Source: Tubulanus polymorphus (taxonomy: Eukaryota > Animalia > Nemertea). Taken from it: DNA of 64,000 nucleotides. The notes under the pieces are model-generated. The model worked only from the letters and a program-made list of their open reading frames with translations. It did no database searches and was not told the DNA's origin. Positions 14,950 through 50,500 of the stretch are shown here, one piece after another; position 1 is the first letter of the stretch, and every line of letters starts with the position of its first letter. A program made the translations under genes and the position numbers. The stretch covers positions 3,100,001 to 3,164,000 of the forward strand of contig NC_134035.1 in the NCBI RefSeq assembly GCF_964204645.1, in the 5' to 3' direction.

Positions 14950-16906
14950 ATGACGGTTGGGGCTCGAACGGCCAGGCATCTCTTCAATGTAGTCAAGTAT
15001 GGCTGTATGGCTCATTGTCTAGTGGAGTTCACAGGAACCGTCGTACAGGTGAGCAGGATTCAAGCTGGCCGAATTCATAAATCGATTTCCTAGTGGTACG
15101 AATCATATGTTTGTTTGTTTCAGTGTGATGGGCCATCGATGTCGCCGACATTGAAGTCTAGGGATCTTGTTCTTGCTGAAAGGCTGTCTGTTGGTCTTCG
15201 GAAAATCGTACCGTACGTATAGGCCTACGTAACGTTAATATCTTTTCCATTTCAGGCTGTCAAGCATTATCCCTGCTTTCCAAAATTTAGCGTGATTTTT
15301 TGGTGAAGAAGGTGCTTTTTCCCTACTTACAAAAATGCAGTCCTCTTGCTGAAATTCTGAACGTCTGCGTGTTTTGAATTTCCGTATCCATGGTAAAAGT
15401 TCTGGTACTGCCACCTCAGAAGTCGATACCAATCATACCCGTGCAGCATGTTTTCAATGGTGAACGTGCCAGAAAATAAGACTTGAGAATATTGGAAACA
15501 AAGTATTTGAGAATGGAATATGTAATGGCCCCAGTGAAGCCATCGAAAATCCTGACCAAGTTGATCCTAACTCCCCACTTCACCTTTCAATGGTTCCACT
15601 TGACAGCCCGCCATTTCAATGAAACTCAGTCTCTGATCGTCATCAATTTCTATCTGAATTTCTATCTGTATTTTGAAGCCAGCTTTAATCATCTAGTCAA
15701 ATCACATGAAGTCTGTCTCAATTTGCTATTAAATCTTCTCTCTAACGTTTGCAGGGGTGACATCGTCATTTGCAAGTCGCCGACGAAGCCCGGACAACAG
15801 ATCTGCAAACGAGTGACCGCTCTAGAAGGAGAGTACGTCACAGTCAGTCATGGACCGGCGAAAGGAAAGATGTTTTACGTAAGTATATATACAGTTCCCC
15901 AAGGGTGGATCTAGGGGATGGTCTCAAGGGTCCGTCCACATGATGCCTGCGCCAACCCATTGAGGTGGCTCTTTTCGTCAAGACAGATATCATTTCGACA
16001 CGCCTCCACTCGGAAATTGCGACCTTTCAGGATGTTTCCTACACACAGATATACAGGAACCAGTTTTATAGACCGGTTATACCTTTAACCCAGGGGTTAA
16101 CTCTATTGGAAATTAATTGAGTTAGCCCCCGGGTTAAAGGTTATACCAGACTAGAAAACCATCCCAAGTATATCTTCAGAAATAACAAAACCCGAGGGTT
16201 CCCGATAGAGGTCCAAAACTTGACTGCTTTATTGGAGAAACGTCCTTTCTTTTCTTCTGGACCCCCGGCCTTCCAATTTTCTCAAACCTGCCTCTGTACA
16301 ACCCACGTACTCTTCAAAATATGATCACGTTTACGTCGATTACTGAATGGTTTTACGCTTAACGAGATGAAAATCGATCGTGACAAAATCGATCGTGATA
16401 GAAGAAATTTCCCAGCGGCGAAACGACAGACTCGAGTCTCGGTCTAGATTTTATGGTCTAGTATTGGGAAATGATTTGAGCACACAATCCTCAAATCCAG
16501 CAAAACCTAAAGACCTCATAAAGCAGCAAATTACTTTGATTTTCAAGATTTCCTTAACACGACCTCCCTATGCCAGTAGTATTAATATCATTCACTATAC
16601 CAGTCATACCACACACCACTATCTACGAATGTTGTTTACGAGAAATTAATTCCGTATTTTTTTCTCTCTTCTCTTTCGAAGGTTCCGCGGGGTCACGTTT
16701 GGCTCGAAGGCGACAACGGCGACAACTCGATCGACTCGTGTTACTACGGCGCCGTGCCGTACGGTCTGATCACGAGTCGCGTGTTCTGTCGCGTGTGGCC
16801 GCCCGCCAGTCTCACCAACAAGCAGTTCATCTTGCCGACGAACGTCACGCGCAACCCGGCCGTCTGCGACCAGAAACCGACCGGACCAGAAACCGACGAC
16901 GAGTGA
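14950..16906 (+). CDS. IMMP1L: Mitochondrial inner membrane protease subunit 1 (S26 peptidase), 178 aa
   Basis: Exons 14950-15048, 15124-15212, 15755-15878, 16682-16906, all GT-AG and in phase. Motifs [15 protein letters not shown] (catalytic Ser), [14 protein letters not shown] (catalytic Lys), [27 protein letters not shown]. Confidence 0.95.
16056..16165. mobile_element. Palindromic MITE in IMMP1L intron 3
   Basis: Long hairpin (TATACCTTTAACCCAGGGGTTAACTC...GAGTTAGCCCCCGGGTTAAAGGTTATA). A second copy lies at about 58229-58339. Confidence 0.65.
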
Positions 16907-39420: not shown

Positions 39421-42400
39421 ATGGAAGTTTTCGCCAGTGGACCGTACCACCACCACCATCCGCCGGAGTTGATTTGGAGTCCGAGCGTCGCGGCCGAGGT
39501 GGATTATAACTTACACCAGGTAAAGCATATTTTCGCCTCAAAGATTAGGTAGAAAGTTCTAACTCGACGATTTCGTCTCAGAGATCTTCTATACAGATTC
39601 GACAACTGTTCATCTTTAGATAGGAATAGTTGTCACTCTTATGGCATGTGTTGGGTTGATTTTCACTATTTTCACGGGGGGTTTTCGATTTTGAAATCGG
39701 TTATCGAAGTAGAGAAGTTCACTGATCGGTCTTACGATATTTACAGCATTTTCTATATTCAAATCGAAGAATTCTAATCGGAAATTGCGTTTTCGCTTCG
39801 AATAAGGTTTCAGGAAAAAGGTGGGAAAAGCGACAACCTCTTCCCAGAAAAAAAAACTTTTTAGAACATTTATTTCGTTGAATTTGCGATTCCTGGAATA
39901 TTCGGATACGTAGTTTAGAACTCAAGCTTCAAGATTAATTTTCCTAATTCGTTCAAAAATTTGAGTAATTCGTGAGCATTCGCAAGTGCAAGAAATTCAA
40001 CTTAAGTCAAGTCCCGCAGTTGATATGAACGTACACGGAAAGATAAATCGGGATCGCGTTATTCTTTCGTTTAATTCGGATCGGAAATATTTTCAGGCCG
40101 AATGGGACGCGAGGACCGGATACGAGGAAATCGTCGGATCGACGTGTGACGCGATCAGCGACGAATCGTCTTACCCGGTCGCGGACAGCGAGACGTCGAT
40201 TCGTTCTCTGAGAAAGATCAACAACAATAACAATAACGATGAAGACGACGAAAATAGCTATTACTACCAAAAACAATTATTACAAGAACACGAAAAAACG
40301 TACATAACGTTAGAATCGAGGAAGATCAAGCAAGAAATAGGTAAGATTTTGTTATGAACGATTTCATTCCTATATAGCAGGCTCTTCTTACTAAGCCGCT
40401 TAATGTAGCTTTGAATGCAACACCTTAAAATACTGATATATCGATGCTATCGTCGTCAGCTAAGAAACCGATGATGTCTAGAGAGTGTCCGTATGAAATG
40501 TCCAAAATATTGAATGCCATTGCAGATTTCGAATAATATGAATGAATATAGGAATTTATCAAAACGTACGGCGTGAGGGCCATAGGTGGGTGAATGGCAC
40601 TGAAAGGGAATGAAATAAGGGAATTTATAACATATCAATGCTATATTTCCCTTTTTGATATTGTTTGTGAACAATCGCTAAGATTTCATAATGAACGATC
40701 TCGTTTCTATATAGCGGGCTCTCTTTACTTAAACGCTCGATGTAGCTTTAAATACAACCATTCGAATACTTATGTTTCTCTTTTTGATATATTTCTTGAC
40801 AATCGGTTTCATAATGAACGATCACATTTCTATAGCAGGCTATTTTTCGTCCCAAGCGCTTCACGTTAGCAGCTCATGATCTTGTAAAATCAATCCCTTT
40901 TCTATTCAAACAGCCAAAGCTTTATAAAAACAACAAGCTTCAGTTGAAGTAATAAGTCAATGCATTTCGATAAACTCATTACTTACGCGAAGCTTATTGC
41001 TTTTATATAACTTTGGCTGTTCAATCATTTGAACTTTCTACCGAAAATGTACTGTTCCATTGATATTTTGAACAATTTCTTCGATATACAACTGTGCAGG
41101 GAGCCAGCTAAGTTTTGAGGAACATTTTTTCGGGGTGGACTGAAACCAACTCCGGTTATAGGAGAAATCAGAAAATTTCAATCAGATTTCGTAATAGAGT
41201 CGATTTGTCGTAGTTTCAGATGATTATAGTCACGCGTCACCGGAATCCGGATTCGATCCTAACAACTTCCAACCCGACTTATGGACGGACTCGCAAGTGA
41301 TCGGATTTCTGTACCACGTAGGCAAACAGATGGGTTGGAATATGAAGGGTTTTCTGGGCGAGAACTTCCAGGGAGTGTCCGGACTGCAATTGTTTCAAAT
41401 GACCGAAGTGGAGATGATCTCTCGGGAGCCGCGCTACGGCGCGCTCATGTATAAGTTCATCAGCGATTTTTTCAAAGGAAAATGTAAGTTCAGTTTTTCC
41501 CTTCAATCGAACGAACTATTATATAGTGTGCGTGCGACGTCACAGCGCGTCATATCGGACGCTAGAGGCAAGGATTTAAACTACTGAAGTCCAGTTAGTC
41601 GAATGTCCGATATGACGCGTGCTTTTGCTTAACGTCGTTCGTATGTTGGTTTCCCACGATTGACAATATATTGGATTGTCCATTAACCCTAACGACTGGA
41701 CTGCGACTTGTTGACTGCACCGCAGCAGAACTCGCTTGTCACTCAGTGACGGCATCATGCCTTATTCCGCCGAAAATTTTCAAAGTGGATTTGAAGACTG
41801 AGACACAGATGGAGACTCTCTTATGAGGTCGAGATCACATTCACGTAACGTCCTAAGCGATACATGCTATAAAAATGATCCCTAAAAATATGATCTACGA
41901 GGTATTTCATTCCGAAGAGTAGGAGCTGAATAGTAAAATGACCTCCATCCAATAACCTTTTCGACTTTTATACTTCTATTACTGACAGAATTGTAAAACA
42001 ATTCTTACCACGATGAAGCTCAGAAAGCTGAACTATAAACTACATCTCTTGACATGATATCTTGAATGGCCGTCAGTCATAAATTTCACAGCTGTATTAA
42101 ATAAACCGGTTTACATAAATAACTTCACCTACACCGCGTACATGGAAATTACACCTCCGCCCAAAATAACACTCGGCACGTTTCGATTGGTCTCTACCGA
42201 TCCCGGAATTCTCTTCTGCGGCGCGATCGTTTCTCTACCTATTACGGAATCGCGGAAAATCTGTAAACCTGATAGACGCAGCCGGTATAGAGAGTTTCTA
42301 ATCCGGATTCGATATTCTTGAACTGGAATATACGACCGATCGAAACCCCTGCCTAAACGAATAGGCCGTAGGTAGTAGGTGGATTTGCTAATGAACTGAT

Positions 42401-45400
42401 ATCAGCGAAAATCCAAAGTTTATCGATCGAAAACATTTACAATGATTTAATACGCTATGTTCTGCGCATTTCAAGAAACTCGATTCATATTCCATGCACA
42501 CACCATTCATAAATCTATCATTTTGACTGTTTCGTTTCAGCAAGTAGTGATTGCTCGTATACATACACGTCAGCTGACGAATCGTCGCAGACGTCGCCAA
42601 GTAGTTTCTCGAATACGTGTGATTATTCAAAATTATCCGGTAAGTTTTGTCTCTTCGATTTAGTAGTTAGTTTATTTTCATTTTCGATGATCATTCGTGG
42701 ACTTTAAAAGCGAATTAGAGTCCATGAACGTTCTTAAAAGTAGCGATCGAGTTAGCGAAAACCCACGATACACAAATCTAAACAACCTGTTTTATTCCTC
42801 ACGTTTCGGCCGGAATAATTCCGCACATCTTCAGGGTTTATTTGAAATTTTTTTTCGAATTTAGAAATTCTTATTTTCTCTGTGAAGATGGGTGGAAGGA
42901 TTCCACCCGGAACGTAAGGAATAAAACAATAGCAGTTGTTTAGATTCATATTTTTGGTTTCGCCCAATGATAGTCAGAACGGTTATAATCTCAACTATTT
43001 ACAACCATGATACCCAATAGTTTCAAGTATCCGATATACGTCGAATAGTTATCATTAACTATTATTGCTGATAGGCATTAACGAGTGGTTGATAGTTTGA
43101 ATATATTCAGAATAAAACCTAACCCGAAGTTCTGTTGATTGAGGGAGGGCTATTCAGCTTTGATAGAACAGGGTTCCCTAACTTTACTGATCTAGATTAA
43201 AGAAACTTTATCTAAAATTGCGTCTGCTGACTGAATTAGTCCTGACAACGAGCACGTCAAAATGAGTTTTAATTTATAGCTAGGGGTCGAAATTGATACT
43301 TCGAAATACAACGAGCCAAACCAACCAGCGTCGAATTCAAAGTTTTAAAACAAACGACCGCTATTTTCTGTACGATAACAATATCATAATAGGTTTAGAA
43401 ATGTAACGACCCTCATCGGATGCTGGCGAAACAAGATAATGATCAGTGCGCCATTCTATTGAAATTGTTTTCAAACAATTCTATTTATGGTGTTTGTATA
43501 TCTAACGCGAGTCGAATTATCTGTAATTATGTTTACCACATGCACAGCGACGTCATTGAAATCCATTCAAAAGCCCTTTTCAAATTGCGGCGAAATTGGT
43601 CTTTTTTTTGTATGTGGCAATTTCGATAAAATGAAGTCTCCCCTCTCATTATTTATCATTGGTTTGTATATTAAGTACATATATATGAATTCATATATGA
43701 TGATAAAAGCTTGCACGTGATGTGGCAAAAATACTGTTATAAAATATCATGGTATTTAAGAGCGAAGATGAAAGTTCATGCGCCCTTTTCATCTAAGATC
43801 TATATTGTAATTGTCATCGGCATAATACCGTTCAAACTGCCTGGATCGGCCGATGTTGGCTCAAATTTGTTAAACTAAGAATTAAATTATACCGCGTTCA
43901 AGTTGTTTGACGACTTTCCATATGAATACTTGGAAAGAAGTCCCCGCTTTAAAGATGAAAGTTGATAATCATAATGCGCCCTCTTCACCCAAGATCAGTT
44001 TATTGCCATTATCATTGGGAAAATACTCGAATCCAGTTCCACAGTTGCGAGTTCGAGTTAACGCTGAGTTATAGTTCATTTTCAGTCAAATTCGAACTAA
44101 AAGCTGTGGAATTGGTTCCAGGTTAGTAGCAACCTATATGATCCTATGTTGTCACCTCAACTCTGTAGGGGAAAAAGATTTTAAAACTTGAGAATTTCTG
44201 TGATATCATGTTCAAGTTAATGAAAATTTGTATATGAAATATTTGAAGTCAGTATCGTGCTGTTCGGGGATCGAGTTTTGAGTTAGGAATTAACTTCGAG
44301 TTAAAATCAAACCGCTTTCAATGTTCACGTAACTCTGAGTCGAACCTCAAGAACCTCCTGAGTCGAACTGTGGGTTCAGAATTCAGAATCCAAGCTACAC
44401 TACTATAATGATAAGATAATGATGATAATAATAATTGTCATAAAATAGCGCAGGCATCCAAACCAGAGTCGGTTCAAATGCGCTCCAAATTTGGTATTAT
44501 TACCCCCAGCCTATACTATTAGACATAAATTGATTGATGATTTGGTTATGGTAAACTGTACGTGTTTTGCAGAAGAACCGATAAGCGTTTTGATCAACGG
44601 GCACAAATACGACTTCGACGCCGATCCCAACTCCTTGAATCAGCCATTCACCGGACATTTCTTCAGTTGTATCGGTGGCGGCGCTGCCGAACATCAACGA
44701 CATCTCTACGAGTACGAACAGAAATTTGATCCGCGATCGATCGAGGGACAATATCATCATCATTCTTATCAGCAGCATCAGCAACATCAGCATCAGCAGC
44801 ACCAGCACCAGCAGCAGCAGCAGCAACAACATCAGCAGCGGGCGTCGCTACCGTCGTTCACGTCGACGTATCAACCGATCTTATCTCGCGAATTCGCGCC
44901 CCGTTTCATGGACGACCGCATGGACGACCGCTGCGGCGACGCCATCTACGACGGCCTGTACGTAGACAGCGATGTGCTCCCCCTGGTGCCCGAAACCGTC
45001 AGTAAACGATGCAGACGCGGAAGCACGGGGTCGTCCAGTAAGGAGTCGATGTACGGCGACCACATTCCGACGTCGAAGAAAAAACCGAGCAATCGAGGCA
45101 GAAAACCGGGTCAGTGTAAGTAGTAGTTGATGATCTTAACTACGGAGTTCAATTTTGTTTCGTGAAATCCATGAAATCGGAAAAATCCGACCGGTCCAAC
45201 TAATACATATTCTTCCGAATTATCAGGCAAAGGAAATCATTTGTGGGAATTCATACGAGACCTGTTGGGCAACCCGGATTTCAATCCGAAAATCATCAAA
45301 TGGGAGGACCTGAGCGCCGGAGTGTTCCGCATTGTGCAGTCGCAGAAGGTCGCCGAAATGTGGGGCCGAAAAAAGAAAAACAGCAACATGAACTACGAGA

Positions 45401-47567
45401 AACTCAGCCGCGCTCTCAGGTGAGTTCTTCTTGAGCTTGTTCGCGTATTGCTTTATATAGCGATACTATATTCTTTCAGAAGTATCGCGTTTCTGCTTTC
45501 GGCGTGTTCCTCGCTTTAGGTTACACCGGTGGGCGACACCACCCCTGGATCTACAGCAGTTTCGCGAATCTAATCGGGCTAATTTCGAGATGAATTCGTT
45601 GAAAATGAAGAGTGTTTCGGGCAACTAATCGGAATGTGTATGTGCACGAAAATGCCAGAGAAACTTAGGATGAACGAAGAAATCCGAATGATCGTTGTTT
45701 TCTAACACATCGAAAATCTGATGAAACGTTACGCGTTGCAGATCTCAATCTTCTATCTGAAGCTAACTCCCTCAGATATTCGATGCGCATGCGTATATAT
45801 GTTCATTTATGTGCTCAGGACCTCACCTCAATCATTCTAATCTATAGATTACTTAACAAACGAACTACTAACACCAGACATTAGATATTAGAAGTTTTTA
45901 TCGGGTCACATTCAATCGTCCAGACTTAACATTGCAATTATGGTCAGAAGGTGAATTACCTGTTGCGCATTGATACCTGCATCGCCTCAAAAGACCAGGA
46001 AGATTTTGCAAGAGAGAGTTTTTTTTTCTTTATTTAATCGTCTGTTTTGATATTTTGTTTGTTAGGTTCTCGCGTACTGCTGGCTATTTTGCTGATCTTC
46101 CAAAGAATCGAAATTTCCCTAAGAAGTTATGCTTCAAATTTGGACCAAAAGCGACATTTTAGCGCAGGAATGCATGGTAGGCAAATCTAACGCTTCAAAG
46201 CAGATAAGAAATGAATGACATTGTTCAAATTCAGTGGCAGATCTAGGCCATATGTGAGATACGACAAGTGTCCTTCAAAATATGTATATATGCATAGTTA
46301 TATATAGATCAAAGTAAATCCCCAAATCAGCAATGCCCAAAAGCCTCTAATATAATGCAACAAATATGACTAGACGGAATTTTCATGTTCCAAAACACGT
46401 GCTCTACGAAGGCGGATTTAGCGTCCAAGGGTTTCGGACTATCCCCCCTCTAAATTGCGAAGCCCAGCGTAAATTATTCCTAAGTGACCAGTTTTCCGAT
46501 GAATAAAACCCAATTTACATTTGATATGCAATTTTAACCCTGGAAAGCCTTGAGAACGTCTTTACTTATTTCCATGCATGTAATTCACCCAAATCGTCAA
46601 CATTTTGCAGCATGTGAAGTTCTTCTAAGCAAATTGACCCAGCAAACATTCATTCGTTACCTAATTTGACTAGATTGACAACTAAAGCGCTTACCTTAAA
46701 TCTAGTAATTCCATCGGTCATGTTTGGTGCTTTCACAAACTCCTCTCGCGGTACTATACTCCTCTGTACTATCCCGAAAACGAACAACTTGGAGCAGGAA
46801 ATCCATCTAAAAGTTCAAATATAGTAACGTCACACTTTGTCATGCTGAAGACATGTTACATCATAGTGCATTCAGTTCGATTGGTTGTTACATTGTTCCC
46901 AGAATCCACACATATTGACCACATGTATATGTACGTCATATTGGCCTAAAATGGCAGTCAATCGTGGCATTTTACTTCAGGAGGTCGCTTATTACGCTTG
47001 ACGGCCATCGTGACTCCCGGTGGTGTCGCGTAGATAGGCGGGGTGGTTCCGAGGGGGTCTCGCATGAAATAAGGACCTACCAGAGCAACGATGGGGTCCT
47101 CTCTCCTACATATTTCCCGCTTTTACAACCATTGCTTGGATTACGGTTCGATTCTTACTGATATTTACTTCGCAAGTAAAACCCGTTATAAAGATACAGT
47201 TAAACACGGTTAAGTCGTCGTATATAGATATCGATGACTTACACCACGGAGTCCATGCTACACTTGATGTATTGGATATAGAAATACAAATTGGGACTTA
47301 AAATAGAGACGACCTGAGTCTTCGGTAATATCTCATCAGTTGACGACTTAACCGACTTTTACTGAGGGCCTTTACACGTGTATATTAGACGTTTCTATGT
47401 TTTATTGCAGGTACTATTATGACCGGGATGTTTTGAGACGGGTCGGCGGAAAGAGATTGGTTTTTCAGTTCGGCGATAAGGCACGCGACTGGCGACCGGC
47501 CATCTCCCCATCCGGCGGGCACGAAGTCGAATCTTATTTTCACTACAGACCTATCCATCCTGTCTAA
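39421..47567 (+). CDS. ESE-subfamily ETS transcription factor (EHF/ELF5/ELF3-like; PNT/SAM + ETS), canonical isoform about 532 aa
   Basis: Exons 39421-39519, 40097-40340, 41220-41483 (PNT: PDLWTDSQVIGFL..FQGVSGLQLFQMT..YGALMY), 42541-42639, 44573-45115, 45227-45419 (HLWEFIRDLL..IIKWED..GVFRIV..VAEMWGRKKKNSNMNYEKLSRALR) and 47411-47567 (YYYDRDVLRRVGGKRLVFQFGDKARDW). All phases are consistent. Confidence 0.9.
40909..41022. mobile_element. Foldback/MITE-like inverted repeat in an ETS intron
   Basis: AACAGCCAAAGCTTTATAAAAACAACAAGCTTC ... GAAGCTTATTGCTTTTATATAACTTTGGCTGTT. Confidence 0.55.
44755..44838 (+). repeat. Coding CAG/CAT/CAC repeat (poly-Gln/His)
   Basis: Encodes HHHSYQQHQQHQHQQHQHQQQQQQQHQQ in ETS exon 5. 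Confidence 0.85.
46066..46162 (+). CDS. Alternative terminal coding exon of the ETS gene (variant helix-3 end and wing)
   Basis: Polypyrimidine acceptor TTTTGTTTGTTAG, phase 2, encoding (R)FSRTAGYFADLPKNRNFPKKLCFKFGPKATF*, which parallels the canonical ...KRLVFQFGDKA. Confidence 0.75.
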
Positions 47568-50500
47568 ATATGCGCGATATTCAAGAAAGAAATTTGCTTC
47601 TCGGAGGAGCATGGCTTCGAAATGTATACATAATAAGAGGACGATATTAGGAAGAAGAGGCGTCTTTTCTTTCCTCGTTATTATCTCGCGTTCCTCGTAA
47701 AATGTAATGGATACAGTGAAAAAGAACAGATACGTCGAGGCCGAAGCGATAAAGATGCATTTATTCTGTATAAAACACGTACGAATATACTAGAAAAGAT
47801 TTATTTTTGTATCGGAACTGAAGTTCACGAATTAACGCTTCACGTAATTGTAGGGCATTATAGCGTATAGGTACTTCACTCATAAAAGGATCTGCTTTTA
47901 ACATATTTTTGTATAGTTTACTACGGTCTATTTTGATATATCATAAGTATAATTGGTATCAAAGGTGCTTCTTGTGTAAGCTCGATATTTGCTAAAGCTG
48001 TTTTGTAAAAAGACGTTTTGAATAGCCTTGCAGTAGTTTTCGCGCGGGCTGCAGTAGTTAAATCTTTTCAAAAACTATTTAGAAATTTCAGTTTTTCCCA
48101 AAAAGCAAATTTGATCTTCTTAAATCCGATTACGTAAAACTTAACTGCGTAACTAAATCGGGGGATACCACCAATAACCATTTCGAGTTCAATGTACGTA
48201 TAGTCGGTAGTTTGAGACAAAAGTTATCATATTAACATGTAGTTTTATGTACATACGATTTCTTATTCAAGCTTTCTTTTTTTAATGCTTATTTGCGAAC
48301 GACCGTGTCACCGTATTATATAGTGTCAACCGAGTCACGCGCAGCACGCCGTGCTTTGTGTACGTACACACGCGGTGTGACCGCTTTTTCACGAATTCTA
48401 AAGATGCCATTGTGCATTGGCGAGGGATTTCCCCGAGGAATGCGCCCCGTTTTAGTATTACTCACCTGTAAATAACGATGTTCAACGCAATAAAAAGATG
48501 TACAGAATTTCTATTATATACTTTATATAGATGCTTTTATTTTAATATTGATAAAATGTAAATAGAAAATCCGTCGATGATAATAATATGAAAGAGAAAT
48601 AAACGCGAACTTAAAAAGTCAATCGAAATTGTCCGTTTCCGTTTACGTGTAGGGCTGTTCTTCCTAAGAAAAGACGAAGTTGGAGATAGTAGAGAAGATT
48701 TGAAGGGGCAGCGAAGTATTTCTAAAACCACCTAAACCCATTCTTCCGATTGCATCGGCGGTAATTCTGTTTCACGCGGACGAATCTCTTGAGGATTTGA
48801 CTTAGAAAATTTTTTTTAAATAATTAATGGAGACATCTATTTTGGATTTCATTTGAACCAATACTTTTATTTCACATCTATTCAACTATATAAGAAAAAA
48901 AATCTCAAGGTGGATTTCCCCTTTAAGACAGACATTAATCAGGACCCAGTTCCACAGTTCTGTGTCAAGTTAGTTGTGAATAAGATTTTTGAGTTTTCCA
49001 TTCAATCCAGTAAGGTTCAGCGTTTATATTTTCCGAAATGCCCTGCATTCACTTCGAGCACTGTACATATTTCACACATTATGAATGGTATCTTCTCGTT
49101 AAAACGTACATTCATGTTTTTCATGAACCCGCATGACTCAAACTATTCAAACCAACCCGAACAACAACACCTATTGATATTAGAAACACTGAATAAATTC
49201 GGGAAATACCACTCATTTCCTCTCATAACGGTCAATCGATTTTTTTCAAAAATTCAAAAATTATCAACGCTGAATAGATATATCATTTCATACATAGTGG
49301 TCTAAATGCGGCTTTATTGTAGGGAGTGTTTAATACAATGCATAGAAATGATATAGTTAGGCTTTTAAAAGCATCATTATACGTGTTGATATGAACATAC
49401 GCAAAAATGAGAGAGCCATAGATGTAAACGCGCCTACGCAGAGTCGCAAATTTTTGGTATGCAATAACTCTTACGTCTGAATGTCCTCACATTAACCCTC
49501 TCAGCTATTCGGTCTAGTAGACTTCGCTTAAGTCGGATCTTTTGGGACCGAAAACATGCGTCCGACCTAAGTGATATCCGAGTAGGATGTTATATATTTC
49601 AATATTTGGTGTAACAACAACAAATATTTCAAAACATGTCCGAGTTGTTGCAGTGAACGGTTAGAGTTGTGGGTGGAGTCCAATTATCCTTGAATTAATC
49701 ATTCGAATGCAAGTAATTACTGCAAGGTATATCAATGATTCATCAGCACGCTGTCAAAAACTGATGGTGCACCTTAACACATGTGATAAGTGCTTCACCT
49801 GAGACTTTCTAATTGAAACTGATGAACTACAAACATTAGACTATAGATTATACGTCCTTATGTGAGATTATTATAGACCAGTTGTCGTCTGCAAATCAAA
49901 TCATCTTCCTTGAAATAGACGGGGCTGTTTACGGCACCAAAAGAAATTCATTAGTTCATGCTAGCAGTTGTTGGATTAATTGTCAAACCAATGTACTACA
50001 ATGAAATCATGTAATGGAATGTATTGGAAATTGTGCAATTTGAAATTGTGTGTATCGGATATTCCATGTAAAAAGACAAATCAACTAGAAACACGTCCAT
50101 CAGTCGTTTCAAAGGCTACAGCGACTGCTCGCGAATAGTCTGTCGCACGGGCGGATCCGGGATACAAAGAAATGGATCCAGAATACAAAGAAATAAAAAC
50201 GGCGAACAGTTAGAAAGGGCAAGTTTTCACGTAGAACGAAAAGCCAAAATTCCAGTGCATTTGCATACAACTTTATTAGCCACTTGAACATTAAAGAGAA
50301 TACAAGCTAAATCTTGCGCTACACGCACTGATGCTGTCTTGTTAGTTGTGAGTGGAAAAAGTGCCCTGAGAAATATTGCCATTGTATATTCAAAAGGGCA
50401 CAGGAGAATATTGGGACGGTAGCACGCGCTGCTTGTCTGGATCCGACCCGAAAGATGGAGTTCTCACTGGGACTTTCGTGAATAAAGTAAATAGGTGATG

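What the first reader, a model, noticed from the sequence alone, without database searches (positions are those of the whole stretch)
45227..47567. Splice-switchable ETS DNA-binding domain: two alternative exons complete the recognition helix and wing
Seen: the intron falls inside the second invariant Arg codon of LSRALR, and two downstream phase-2 exons with strong acceptors can complete the domain. Exon 47411 gives canonical YYYDRDVLRRVGGKRLVFQFGDKA; exon 46066 gives FSRTAGYFADLPKNRNFPKKLCFKFGPKA. The variant keeps the K-[KR]-L-x-F-x-F-G-x-K-A beta-4 pattern, so it looks like a diverged exon duplicate rather than chance, but it replaces YYY with FSR and lengthens the wing by 5 aa. A possible donor (ATG|GTAGGC, 46176) and an AATAAA (46502) allow either cassette or alternative-last-exon use. 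Established: in Ets-1 the two Arg residues read GGA, the following Tyr and the beta3-beta4 wing contact flanking DNA and partner proteins. Inference: one gene makes two ETS proteins with different DNA specificity or affinity, or a built-in antagonist.
Basis: partly seen in the sequence, partly recalled or inferred. Interest (0 to 1): 0.85.

Follow-up and report, generated by a model that had tools for sequence, protein, structure and literature searches.

The report
Ancient splice switch inside an ETS domain
A ribbon-worm gene for a DNA-binding regulator finishes its DNA-reading part with either of two neighbouring exons, and this exon pair is shared by worms, clams, lamp shells, water bears, ticks, spiders and nematodes, so one gene has probably made two differently tuned regulators for over half a billion years.

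Summary
The window is from the nemertean Tubulanus polymorphus. The gene is LOC141912774, its only detected ESE/EHF-class ETS gene.

Exon 45227-45419 ends inside the second invariant Arg codon. Two homologous exons follow:
- 46066-46176 encodes a variant helix-3 end and a wing 5 aa longer, then stops at TAG 46160.
- 47411 onwards is the canonical exon.

RNA contigs from two independent studies carry joints 45419>46066 and 46176>47411. So the first exon is an included 111-nt cassette, not a last exon. The skipped form was seen only as RefSeq isoforms X1-X3. The variant is RefSeq isoform X4.

The variant exon is not chance. A profile of 32 non-nemertean "long-wing" tails hits it at E 3e-17.

The order exon 1, long-wing exon, canonical exon recurs in brachiopod, annelid, scallop and tardigrade loci. 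Ticks, spiders and nematodes have matching isoform pairs. Lineus and Caenorhabditis keep only the long exon.

The long exon always replaces the Tyr that sets ETS +4/+5 specificity: Phe, Thr or Asn. AlphaFold folds the variant domain confidently and it matches Elf3-DNA (TM 0.85).

The effect on DNA binding is inferred, not shown. I found no paper describing this exon pair. FoxP is the closest precedent.

The parts
41297..41482 (+). Part of the exon coding the divergent Pointed (SAM_PNT) domain of the same gene. Boundaries are approximate.
   Evidence: The ORF translation matches residues about 143-204 of RefSeq isoform P0151. Pfam SAM_PNT scores 22.3 bits, just under the 24-bit cut-off.
44572..45115 (+). 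Linker exon with a Gln/His-rich tract at 44752-44844. It has two donors 6 nt apart, after 45109 and after 45115.
   Evidence: RNA contigs of X2 and X5 begin this exon at 44572, and joint 45115>45227 is GT..AG. RefSeq X1 (..PGQCKGN..) and X2 (..PGKGN..) differ by the two donors.
45227..45419 (+). ETS exon 1: helix 1 to most of helix 3. It ends with AG of the second invariant Arg codon (phase-2 intron).
   Evidence: Translation. Pfam Ets 78.7 bits, profile positions 1-59 of 81. RNA joints on both sides.
46066..46176 (+). 111-nt cassette exon. It encodes the long-wing variant of the helix-3 end, strand 3, a longer loop and strand 4. The coding part is 46066-46159, the stop TAG is at 46160-46162, and the donor follows 46176.
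   Evidence: Translation. Joints 45419>46066 and 46176>47411 in RNA contigs of two studies. Profile hit E 3e-17. Identical to the end of RefSeq isoform X4, P0153.
46502..46507 (+). No evidence that it is used.
   Evidence: The sequence is present. RNA run X2 has depth 0-8 over 46265-46566.
47411..47567 (+). Canonical ETS 3' exon (YYY, short wing) with stop TAA at 47565-47567. It is coding when the cassette is skipped and 3' UTR when the cassette is included. The transcript runs on past 48500.
   Evidence: Translation. Canonical-tail profile 43.5 bits, E 4e-12. It forms the end of RefSeq X1-X3. RNA contigs cover 47410-48500.

Best explanation
This is the 3' half of the only detected ESE/EHF-class (nematode ETS-4-like) ETS transcription factor gene of the nemertean Tubulanus polymorphus.

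The ETS domain is cut by a phase-2 intron inside the second DNA-reading Arg codon. Two tandem, homologous exons can each restore that Arg and finish the domain.

- Cassette included (46066-46176): helix 3 ends in Phe-Ser-Arg instead of Tyr-Tyr-Tyr, the strand 3-strand 4 wing loop is 5 residues longer, and the protein stops at the cassette's own TAG. The canonical exon then lies in the 3' UTR.
- Cassette skipped: the canonical exon (47411 onwards) gives an ordinary class-II-like ETS domain.

Shown: both splice joints of the included form in RNA; the homology and deep conservation of the exon pair; a confident ETS fold for the variant.

Inferred: the switch changes DNA-site preference, mainly at core position +4/+5, and probably backbone contacts or partner contacts of the wing. 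One gene would then regulate two partly different target sets. The long-wing form is a working DNA-binding domain, not merely a blocker.

Confidence by claim: about 0.9 that this is a real, selected alternative exon pair giving two ETS isoforms; about 0.55 that the main effect is a change of DNA specificity.
For: RNA:
- Contigs of run X2 (exon depth 500-900 against intron depth 0-16) and of run X5 (a different study, 2014) both carry GT..AG joints 45419>46066 and 46176>47411.

Annotation:
- RefSeq isoforms X1-X3 are canonical and X4 is the variant.

Homology:
- The long-tail profile hits the cassette at E 3e-17.
- In the alignment of 34 long-type domains, P-K-K-L, F and G of strand 4 are invariant.

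Purifying selection:
- The cassettes of Tubulanus and Lineus are identical at 79%, 86% and 41% of codon positions 1, 2 and 3. 22 of 29 residues are identical.

Same order of exon 1, long exon and canonical exon:
- Lingula, Owenia and Mizuhopecten and Paramacrobiotus.
- Eight groups of proteins share an identical 50-residue upstream part but carry long or short tails. They include ticks, spiders and nematodes.

Long exon only:
- Lineus and Caenorhabditis nigoni.

Structure:
- AlphaFold2 model of the variant domain: pLDDT 91.8, pTM 0.83, strand 4 shifted from 81-84 to 86-89.
- Best Foldseek match is the mouse Elf3-DNA complex 3jtg, TM 0.85.

Residue logic:
- The Tyr after the second Arg sets +4/+5 preference. 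Changing it to His, Asn or Gln moves an ETS domain between specificity classes (PMC2905244).
- Long exons carry Phe, Thr or Asn there. Short exons carry Tyr or His.

Biochemistry in a relative:
- C. elegans ETS-4 binds GGAA and GGAT equally, with Kd about 1 nM (PMC2940738).
- The C. elegans protein P0200 is of the long type.
Against: - No contig shows the skipped joint 45419>47411. The canonical isoform rests on RefSeq models whose evidence I could not see, and contigs cannot give isoform ratios.
- No binding data exist for any spiralian Phe-Ser/Cys-Arg variant.
- The nemertean cassette ends early and lacks the Gly-Trp that follows strand 4 in other phyla. It also has Arg where others have Gly in the wing loop.
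- Pfam's Ets profile does not score the variant tail: the match stops at profile position 70 of 81, and the exon alone gives no hit.
- That P0200 is ETS-4 rests on the names svh-5/Tag-97 of its Pristionchus relative and on my recollection of WormBase synonyms. It is not a tool result.
- The AlphaFold model used an alignment of the same family and says nothing about DNA affinity.
Confidence: 0.72

Rival explanations
1. Built-in antagonist. The long-wing isoform keeps the Pointed domain and the linker but binds DNA weakly or not at all. It would act by titrating partners or blocking sites, as a dominant-negative form.
For: All three helix-3 Tyr residues are replaced. The nemertean tail is truncated before the conserved Gly-Trp. 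Pfam gives the tail no score. In the FoxP precedent the alternative isoform was predicted to have lost direct base contacts.
Against: Both invariant Arg residues and the strand 4 K-K-L-x-F-x-F-G are kept. The fold is confident and ETS-like. Lineus and Caenorhabditis keep only the long exon. ETS-4, probably of this type, binds DNA at about 1 nM.
Confidence: 0.13
2. Partner switch rather than DNA switch. The longer wing and the changed helix-3 end mainly alter protein-protein contacts, such as cooperative binding with neighbouring factors or autoinhibition. The DNA motif would stay the same.
For: Solved ETS complexes among the Foldseek matches are partner complexes: FOXK1-ELF1 8bzm, SAP-1/SRF 1k6o and Ets-1/Pax5 1mdm. 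The invariant P-K and P-K-K of the long loop could form a docking surface.
Against: The residue that always changes is the one shown to set +4/+5 preference. No partner is known for this class in any protostome.
Confidence: 0.12
3. Poison cassette. The exon serves only to bring in a premature stop and lower the output of the canonical protein. Its peptide would be irrelevant.
For: Formally it is a stop-containing cassette upstream of the normal stop.
Against: The peptide is conserved across phyla at E 3e-17. Third codon positions are free while first and second positions are held. The stop lies only 14 nt before the last exon joint. The included form is the one assembled in both RNA data sets.
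Confidence: 0.03

Closest known systems
FoxP / FoxP1 alternative forkhead-domain exons (Santos et al. 2011, PMC3002244)
   Same: A tandem exon duplication dated to early Bilateria. Alternative splicing swaps part of a winged-helix DNA-binding domain, including residues critical for DNA specificity. The fold is kept. Some lineages or paralogues retained only one of the exons.
   Different: A different transcription factor family (forkhead, not ETS). Here the switch is a stop-containing cassette, so both exons sit in one mRNA. The ETS pair is documented here in protostomes. Amphioxus has a pair of two short-wing exons, and I saw none in vertebrate sequences.
Vertebrate ESE subfamily (ELF3, EHF, ELF5) and the mouse Elf3-DNA structure 3jtg
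   Same: Pointed plus ETS architecture and the HLWEFIRD-type helix 1. The canonical exon reads YYY...G-[KR]-R-L-V-[FY]-x-F-G. The best structural match of the variant model is 3jtg, TM 0.85.
   Different: The vertebrate proteins retrieved here carry only the short canonical tail. No long-wing exon was seen among them.
C. elegans ETS-4 (Thyagarajan et al. 2010, PMC2940738)
   Same: Nematode proteins of this gene, including C. elegans P0200, carry the long-wing tail with the same 5-residue insertion and P-K-K-L. ETS-4 is a sequence-specific activator that binds GGAA and GGAT alike.
   Different: Caenorhabditis has lost the canonical exon, so it has no switch. The nematode tail starts Thr-Tyr-Tyr, not Phe-Ser-Arg. 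The paper treats ETS-4 as a SPDEF orthologue. The identity of P0200 with ETS-4 was not proven here.
ETS specificity classes I-IV (Wei et al. 2010, PMC2905244)
   Same: Class differences map to the residue after the second Arg: Tyr in classes I and IIa, His in IIb, Asn in III, Gln in IV. They also map to the strand 4 residue after K-R, which is Leu or Tyr. Both Tubulanus exons keep the class-II Leu.
   Different: In vertebrates the classes are fixed in separate genes. Here the class-determining position is toggled by splicing within one gene, and Phe or Thr at that position is not among the four classes.
COE/EBF duplicated HLH exon (PMC2394523)
   Same: An internal exon duplication that creates a variant motif within a transcription factor domain (title and abstract).
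   Different: Inclusion is mandatory in vertebrates rather than a switch. It affects a dimerisation motif, not the DNA-reading helix.

Membership tests
ETS domain (Pfam PF00178) | Profile match above the curated cut-off | tested here: met
   Exon 1 alone scores 78.7 bits. The canonical isoform P0151 scores 104.9 bits over profile positions 1-80 of 81. The variant isoform P0153 scores 78.5 bits over 1-70 of 81. The cut-off is 26.9 bits.
ETS domain (Pfam PF00178) | The variant exon on its own is recognised as the C-terminal third of the domain | tested here: not met
   No Pfam hit at E up to 10 for window:46067-46159. In P0153 the match ends at profile position 70.
ETS domain (Pfam PF00178) | Winged helix-turn-helix fold: H1, S1, S2, H2, H3, S3, S4 | tested here: met
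   AlphaFold2 model of the variant domain has pLDDT 91.8 and elements H5-14, E23-27, E32-35, H38-48, H56-65, E72-73, E86-89. Foldseek finds 109 PDB matches at E up to 0.001. All 50 listed are ETS domains, and the top match is 3jtg with TM 0.85.
ETS domain (Pfam PF00178) | Two invariant helix-3 arginines that read GGA | tested here: met
   LSRALR is present in both isoforms. The second Arg codon AG|G is completed by the first base of either exon.
ETS domain (Pfam PF00178) | Sequence-specific binding to GGA(A/T) | not testable with these tools
   The only indirect support is ETS-4 of C. elegans, probably of the long type, which binds with Kd about 1 nM.
ESE / EHF-ELF3-ELF5 class (protostome ETS-4-like) | N-terminal Pointed domain plus C-terminal ETS domain | tested here: inconclusive
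   SAM_PNT scores 22.3 bits at residues 140-204, just under the 24-bit cut-off. The orthologues in Lingula, Owenia, Mizuhopecten and Lineus carry PF02198.
ESE / EHF-ELF3-ELF5 class (protostome ETS-4-like) | Closest relatives by sequence are ESE-class proteins | tested here: met
   The best hits of exon 1 are proteins that their sources name ETS homologous factor, or Elf-3-like or Elf-5-like.
Tandem-duplicated alternative exons (mutually exclusive exon type) | Neighbouring exons that are homologous, in the same phase and of similar length | tested here: met
   Both exons start with the G that completes Arg. They share K-[KR]-L-x-F-x-F-G-x-K-A. Each exon's profile cross-hits the other exon. They lie 1,234 nt apart.
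Tandem-duplicated alternative exons (mutually exclusive exon type) | Never together in one mature mRNA | tested here: not met
   RNA contigs of X2 and X5 contain the cassette spliced to the canonical exon. Exclusivity holds only at the protein level, through the TAG at 46160.
Poison (NMD) cassette exon | Stop-bearing cassette whose peptide is not under selection | tested here: not met
   The peptide is conserved across phyla. The codon-position identity pattern of 0.79, 0.86 and 0.41 shows purifying selection.

The most novel reading that the evidence does not exclude
The last common ancestor of protostomes, and perhaps of bilaterians given the amphioxus exon pair, already used splicing to toggle the specificity-determining residue and the wing length of one ETS factor. 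A single ESE/ETS-4 gene would then cover two DNA-specificity classes with distinct target sets. Lineages later fixed one form or the other: Caenorhabditis and Lineus the long form, vertebrates the short form. Phe-Ser/Cys-Arg (Spiralia) and Thr-Tyr-Tyr (Ecdysozoa) would define ETS binding classes beyond the four known from mammals.
Probability: 0.45. Interest if true: 0.78.

Novelty: new member of a known kind. Interest (0 to 1): 0.62.

Why it matters
ETS factors are a textbook case of many paralogues with nearly the same DNA motif. How they gain specificity is a long-standing question.

Here, one gene swaps by splicing exactly the residue that mutagenesis has shown to move ETS domains between specificity classes, together with the wing. 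The arrangement has been kept in at least six protostome phyla.

- It gives a natural, matched pair of domains for testing how helix-3 and wing changes tune ETS binding.
- It bears on C. elegans ETS-4, which would be the "variant-only" survivor of an old switch.
- It explains wrong gene models that fuse both exons or drop one of them.
- It adds a second deep example, after FoxP, of a winged-helix DNA-binding domain diversified by tandem exon duplication.

The raw isoforms are already in RefSeq as automatic models. The new part is the recognition and the evolutionary reach of the pair.

Tried and rejected
Tested and rejected:
- Chance open frame. Rejected by the profile hit (E 3e-17), the RNA joints and the orthologous exons.
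- Alternative last exon with the AATAAA at 46502. Not supported in Tubulanus: RNA depth is 0-8 downstream of the cassette, and the donor at 46176 is used.
- A feature shared with the paralogue. The E74/ELF-like gene on contig C5 has the same intron position and phase, but only one 3' exon, 254 nt downstream.

Searches that gave little or nothing:
- The search for homologous proteins on the variant tail of P0153 found only 3 proteins, because of the word-index limit.
- The look-up of encoding contigs had no record for P0064, P0200, P0249 or P0251. The C. elegans and tick loci could therefore not be read, and C. nigoni was used instead.
- Seven literature searches found no description of this ETS exon pair.
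- The search of earlier findings held nothing on it.

Limits on what I did:
- The skipped joint 45419>47411 did not appear in any contig.
Window sequence was searched exon by exon, by reference. Whole isoforms were taken as the RefSeq proteins P0151 and P0153 returned.
Full report
**What is in the sequence**

- Exon 45227-45419 encodes KGNHLWEF...YEKLSRAL. It ends with AG of an Arg codon in front of GTGAGT.
- After a long pyrimidine tract and the AG at 46064-46065, exon 46066 supplies the missing G. It then reads 31 residues and a TAG at 46160-46162.
- After ...ttattgcAG, exon 47411 also supplies a G. It then reads YYYDRD...KRLVFQFGDKA... and stops at TAA 47565-47567.
Whatever happens downstream, a transcript that includes it ends the protein at ...KFGPKATF.
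- Pfam recognises exon 1 as the first 59 of 81 positions of the Ets profile (78.7 bits). It recognises the canonical exon weakly and the variant exon not at all.

**Is the variant exon used?**

One search for sequencing runs gave five holders from two studies. I laid four runs on 44000-48500.
- Run X2 (2024) has depth 500-900 on exons and 0-16 on introns. Run X5 (2014, 19 Mb of contigs) behaves likewise. Both are therefore RNA.
- Both carry contigs with GT..AG joints 45419>46066 and 46176>47411. X2 also carries 45115>45227.
- The exon is therefore a 111-nt cassette, spliced on both sides, with the canonical exon downstream in the same mRNA.
- No contig shows the skipped joint 45419>47411. Contigs drop minor variants, so this is not evidence of absence, and no isoform ratio can be given.
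- The AATAAA at 46502 has no support: X2 depth is 0 at 46416-46566.

**Which gene, which organism**

A phmmer search of exon 1 against 1.84 billion representatives found a 100% identical protein. An exact look-up names it: Tubulanus polymorphus (Nemertea), LOC141912774, "uncharacterized protein".
- Isoforms X1-X3 (540, 538 and 534 aa) end with the canonical exon.
- Isoform X4 (XP_074660267.1, 520 aa) ends with the cassette peptide.
- The whole protein has a divergent Pointed domain (22.3 bits, cut-off 24) and the ETS domain.
- A six-frame Pfam scan of the 268-Mb assembly shows 12 ETS hits (a lower bound). Only this gene is of the ESE type.
- An E74/ELF-like gene on contig C5 shares the intron position and phase. 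It has a single 3' exon 254 nt downstream. The duplication is therefore specific to this gene.

**Not chance, and not young**

- Compared only with the canonical exon, the cassette scores 37 (BLOSUM62 local). 6 of 500 Markov shuffles of the intron reach this score.
- About 30 of the 150 best representatives carry, directly after SRAMR, a tail of the cassette type: F-[CS]-R-x-A-G-Y-F-x-x-V-P-K-x-G-x-[FY]-P-K-K-L-C-F-[KR]-F-G.
- In an alignment of 34 such domains, P-K-K-L, F and G of strand 4 are invariant, and the P-K of the loop is nearly so.
- A profile built from the 32 non-nemertean tails hits the window frame at 46067 with E 3e-17 (59.5 bits) among 2,900 six-frame fragments. It touches the canonical exon only at 20.9 bits.
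- The cassettes of Tubulanus and Lineus longissimus are identical at 79%, 86% and 41% of codon positions 1, 2 and 3, with 22 of 29 residues identical. That is the signature of purifying selection on the peptide.

**The same pair in the same order elsewhere**

I fetched loci with the look-up of encoding contigs and scanned them in six frames. The order exon 1, long-wing exon, canonical exon holds in:

| Species | Phylum | Locus | Exon 1 / long / canonical |
|---|---|---|---|
| Lingula anatina | Brachiopoda | L003 | 12550 / 13054 / 13711 |
| Owenia fusiformis | Annelida | L004 | 12349 / 12695 / 13879 |
| Mizuhopecten yessoensis | Mollusca | L005 | 12513 / 12991 / 13732 |
| Paramacrobiotus metropolitanus | Tardigrada | L008 | 21044 / 21473 / 21957 |

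In Mizuhopecten the canonical exon lies beyond the annotated gene end.

- RefSeq isoform pairs with an identical front and long or short tails exist for Lingula and Paramacrobiotus.
- A second search seeded with a nematode domain adds ticks, spiders and nematodes. In all there are eight groups with an identical 50-residue upstream part and both tail types.
- Lineus (L007) and Caenorhabditis nigoni (L009) hold only the long exon. No canonical exon was found on either strand at E up to 0.01.
- Branchiostoma lanceolatum ELF3 has two tandem short-wing exons used in isoforms X1 and X2.
- The pair therefore goes back at least to the protostome ancestor.

**What the switch changes**

- The long exon always replaces the Tyr that follows the second Arg. 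It is Phe in nemerteans, brachiopods, annelids and molluscs. It is Thr in nematodes, chelicerates and the tardigrade, and Asn in Schistocerca and Coptotermes. Short exons have Tyr, or His in a few.
- Wei et al. 2010 (PMC2905244) showed by mutagenesis that this Tyr controls preference at core position +4/+5. His defines class IIb, Asn class III and Gln (with a Ser) class IV. One or two such changes move ELF4 between classes.
- The strand 4 Leu that distinguishes class II from class I is kept in both Tubulanus exons.
- The loop between strands 3 and 4 is 5 residues longer in the variant.
- AlphaFold2 with the family alignment gives a confident variant domain: pLDDT 91.8, pTM 0.83. It has the same elements as the canonical model, with strand 4 moved from 81-84 to 86-89.
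- Foldseek places the variant model on the mouse Elf3-DNA complex 3jtg (TM 0.85). All 50 listed PDB matches are ETS domains.

**Likely mechanism**

- Shown: a cassette with its own stop decides which of two homologous exons finishes the DNA-binding domain. Both versions are under selection.
- Inferred: the two proteins differ in site preference and perhaps in wing-mediated contacts.
- The long form is unlikely to be only an antagonist, because two lineages kept it alone.
- C. elegans ETS-4 binds GGAA and GGAT equally at about 1 nM (PMC2940738). The C. elegans protein P0200 is of the long type. Its identity with ETS-4 rests on the names svh-5/Tag-97 of its Pristionchus relative and on my memory of WormBase synonyms, so I mark it as probable.
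- In nemerteans the long form may even be the main one. It is the form assembled in both RNA sets. Lineus has lost the canonical exon. The Tubulanus canonical exon fits its family profile less well (43.5 bits against 46-73 bits in the other loci), while the cassette fits its own profile at 59.5 bits.

**Comparison with what is known**

- Seven literature searches found no description of alternative ETS-domain exons in this class. A survey of molluscan ETS genes does not mention it (PMC10664356).
- The closest precedent is FoxP. It has an early bilaterian tandem exon duplication, alternative splicing within a winged-helix domain, changed specificity residues, and retention of one exon in some paralogues (PMC3002244).
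- I therefore file this as a new member of a known kind. It is not a categorically new mechanism.

**Limits**

- Contigs, not raw reads, were laid, so there are no junction counts.
- The skipped form was not seen directly.
- No DNA-binding data exist for any Phe-type variant.
- The taxon sampling follows what the protein collections and twelve locus look-ups allowed.
Whole isoforms were the RefSeq proteins returned.

Noticed in passing
window 45105-45121: Two donors 6 nt apart, after 45109 and after 45115, add or drop Gln-Cys just before the ETS domain. RefSeq X2 uses the first and X1 the second. The RNA contig of run X2 uses 45115.
   Followed up: partly
G000:C5:22918900-22919400 (L002), minus strand: The E74/ELF-like ETS gene has its intron at the same place and phase, inside the second Arg codon. 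It has a single canonical 3' exon 254 nt downstream. The intron position therefore predates the split between the ELF and ESE classes.
   Followed up: yes
L006 15077 and 15241 (Branchiostoma lanceolatum ELF3): Two tandem short-wing 3' ETS exons, about 160 nt apart, are used in RefSeq isoforms X2 and X1, both 466 aa. The upstream one resembles the ecdysozoan short exon (..VP/PV..RRLVYKFGPxATGW). The downstream one resembles the vertebrate and spiralian short exon. This hints at more than two ancestral exon types.
   Followed up: partly
L003 13672 and 17580 (Lingula anatina): The canonical exon and its upstream flank occur twice, identically, about 3.9 kb apart. This is either a recent duplication or an assembly artefact.
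   Followed up: no
L004 about 21085, minus strand (Owenia fusiformis): A further canonical-type ETS 3' exon (E 1e-9) lies on the opposite strand, about 7 kb downstream. It is probably a neighbouring ESE paralogue.
   Followed up: no
proteins P0171 (Pinctada), P0084 (Owenia), P0209 (Pristionchus), P0222 (Strongylus), P0227 (Steinernema): These public gene models read from the long exon straight into the canonical exon, giving a tail with two wings. They are most likely annotation artefacts caused by this exon pair.
   Followed up: partly
proteins P0232 (Coptotermes), P0255 (Schistocerca): Insect long-wing tails start Asn-Tyr-Tyr. Asn at this position is the class III (SPI1/PU.1) determinant in mammals.
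   Followed up: no
window 44000-44150, 44453-44603, 45812-45962: Short stretches have very high summed contig depth in both DNA and RNA runs, up to 22,555. These are dispersed repeats, one of them inside the intron upstream of the cassette.
   Followed up: no
window 44752-44844: A Gln/His-rich coding tract (HQQHQ...QQQQ) lies in the linker exon. Read laying skipped it as a repeat.
   Followed up: no
L007 about 16620-16650 (Lineus longissimus): About 20 nt after the cassette's stop there is a donor-like AG|GTGCGT, as in Tubulanus. No canonical exon follows within 7 kb. This may be a relic of the cassette architecture.
   Followed up: partly
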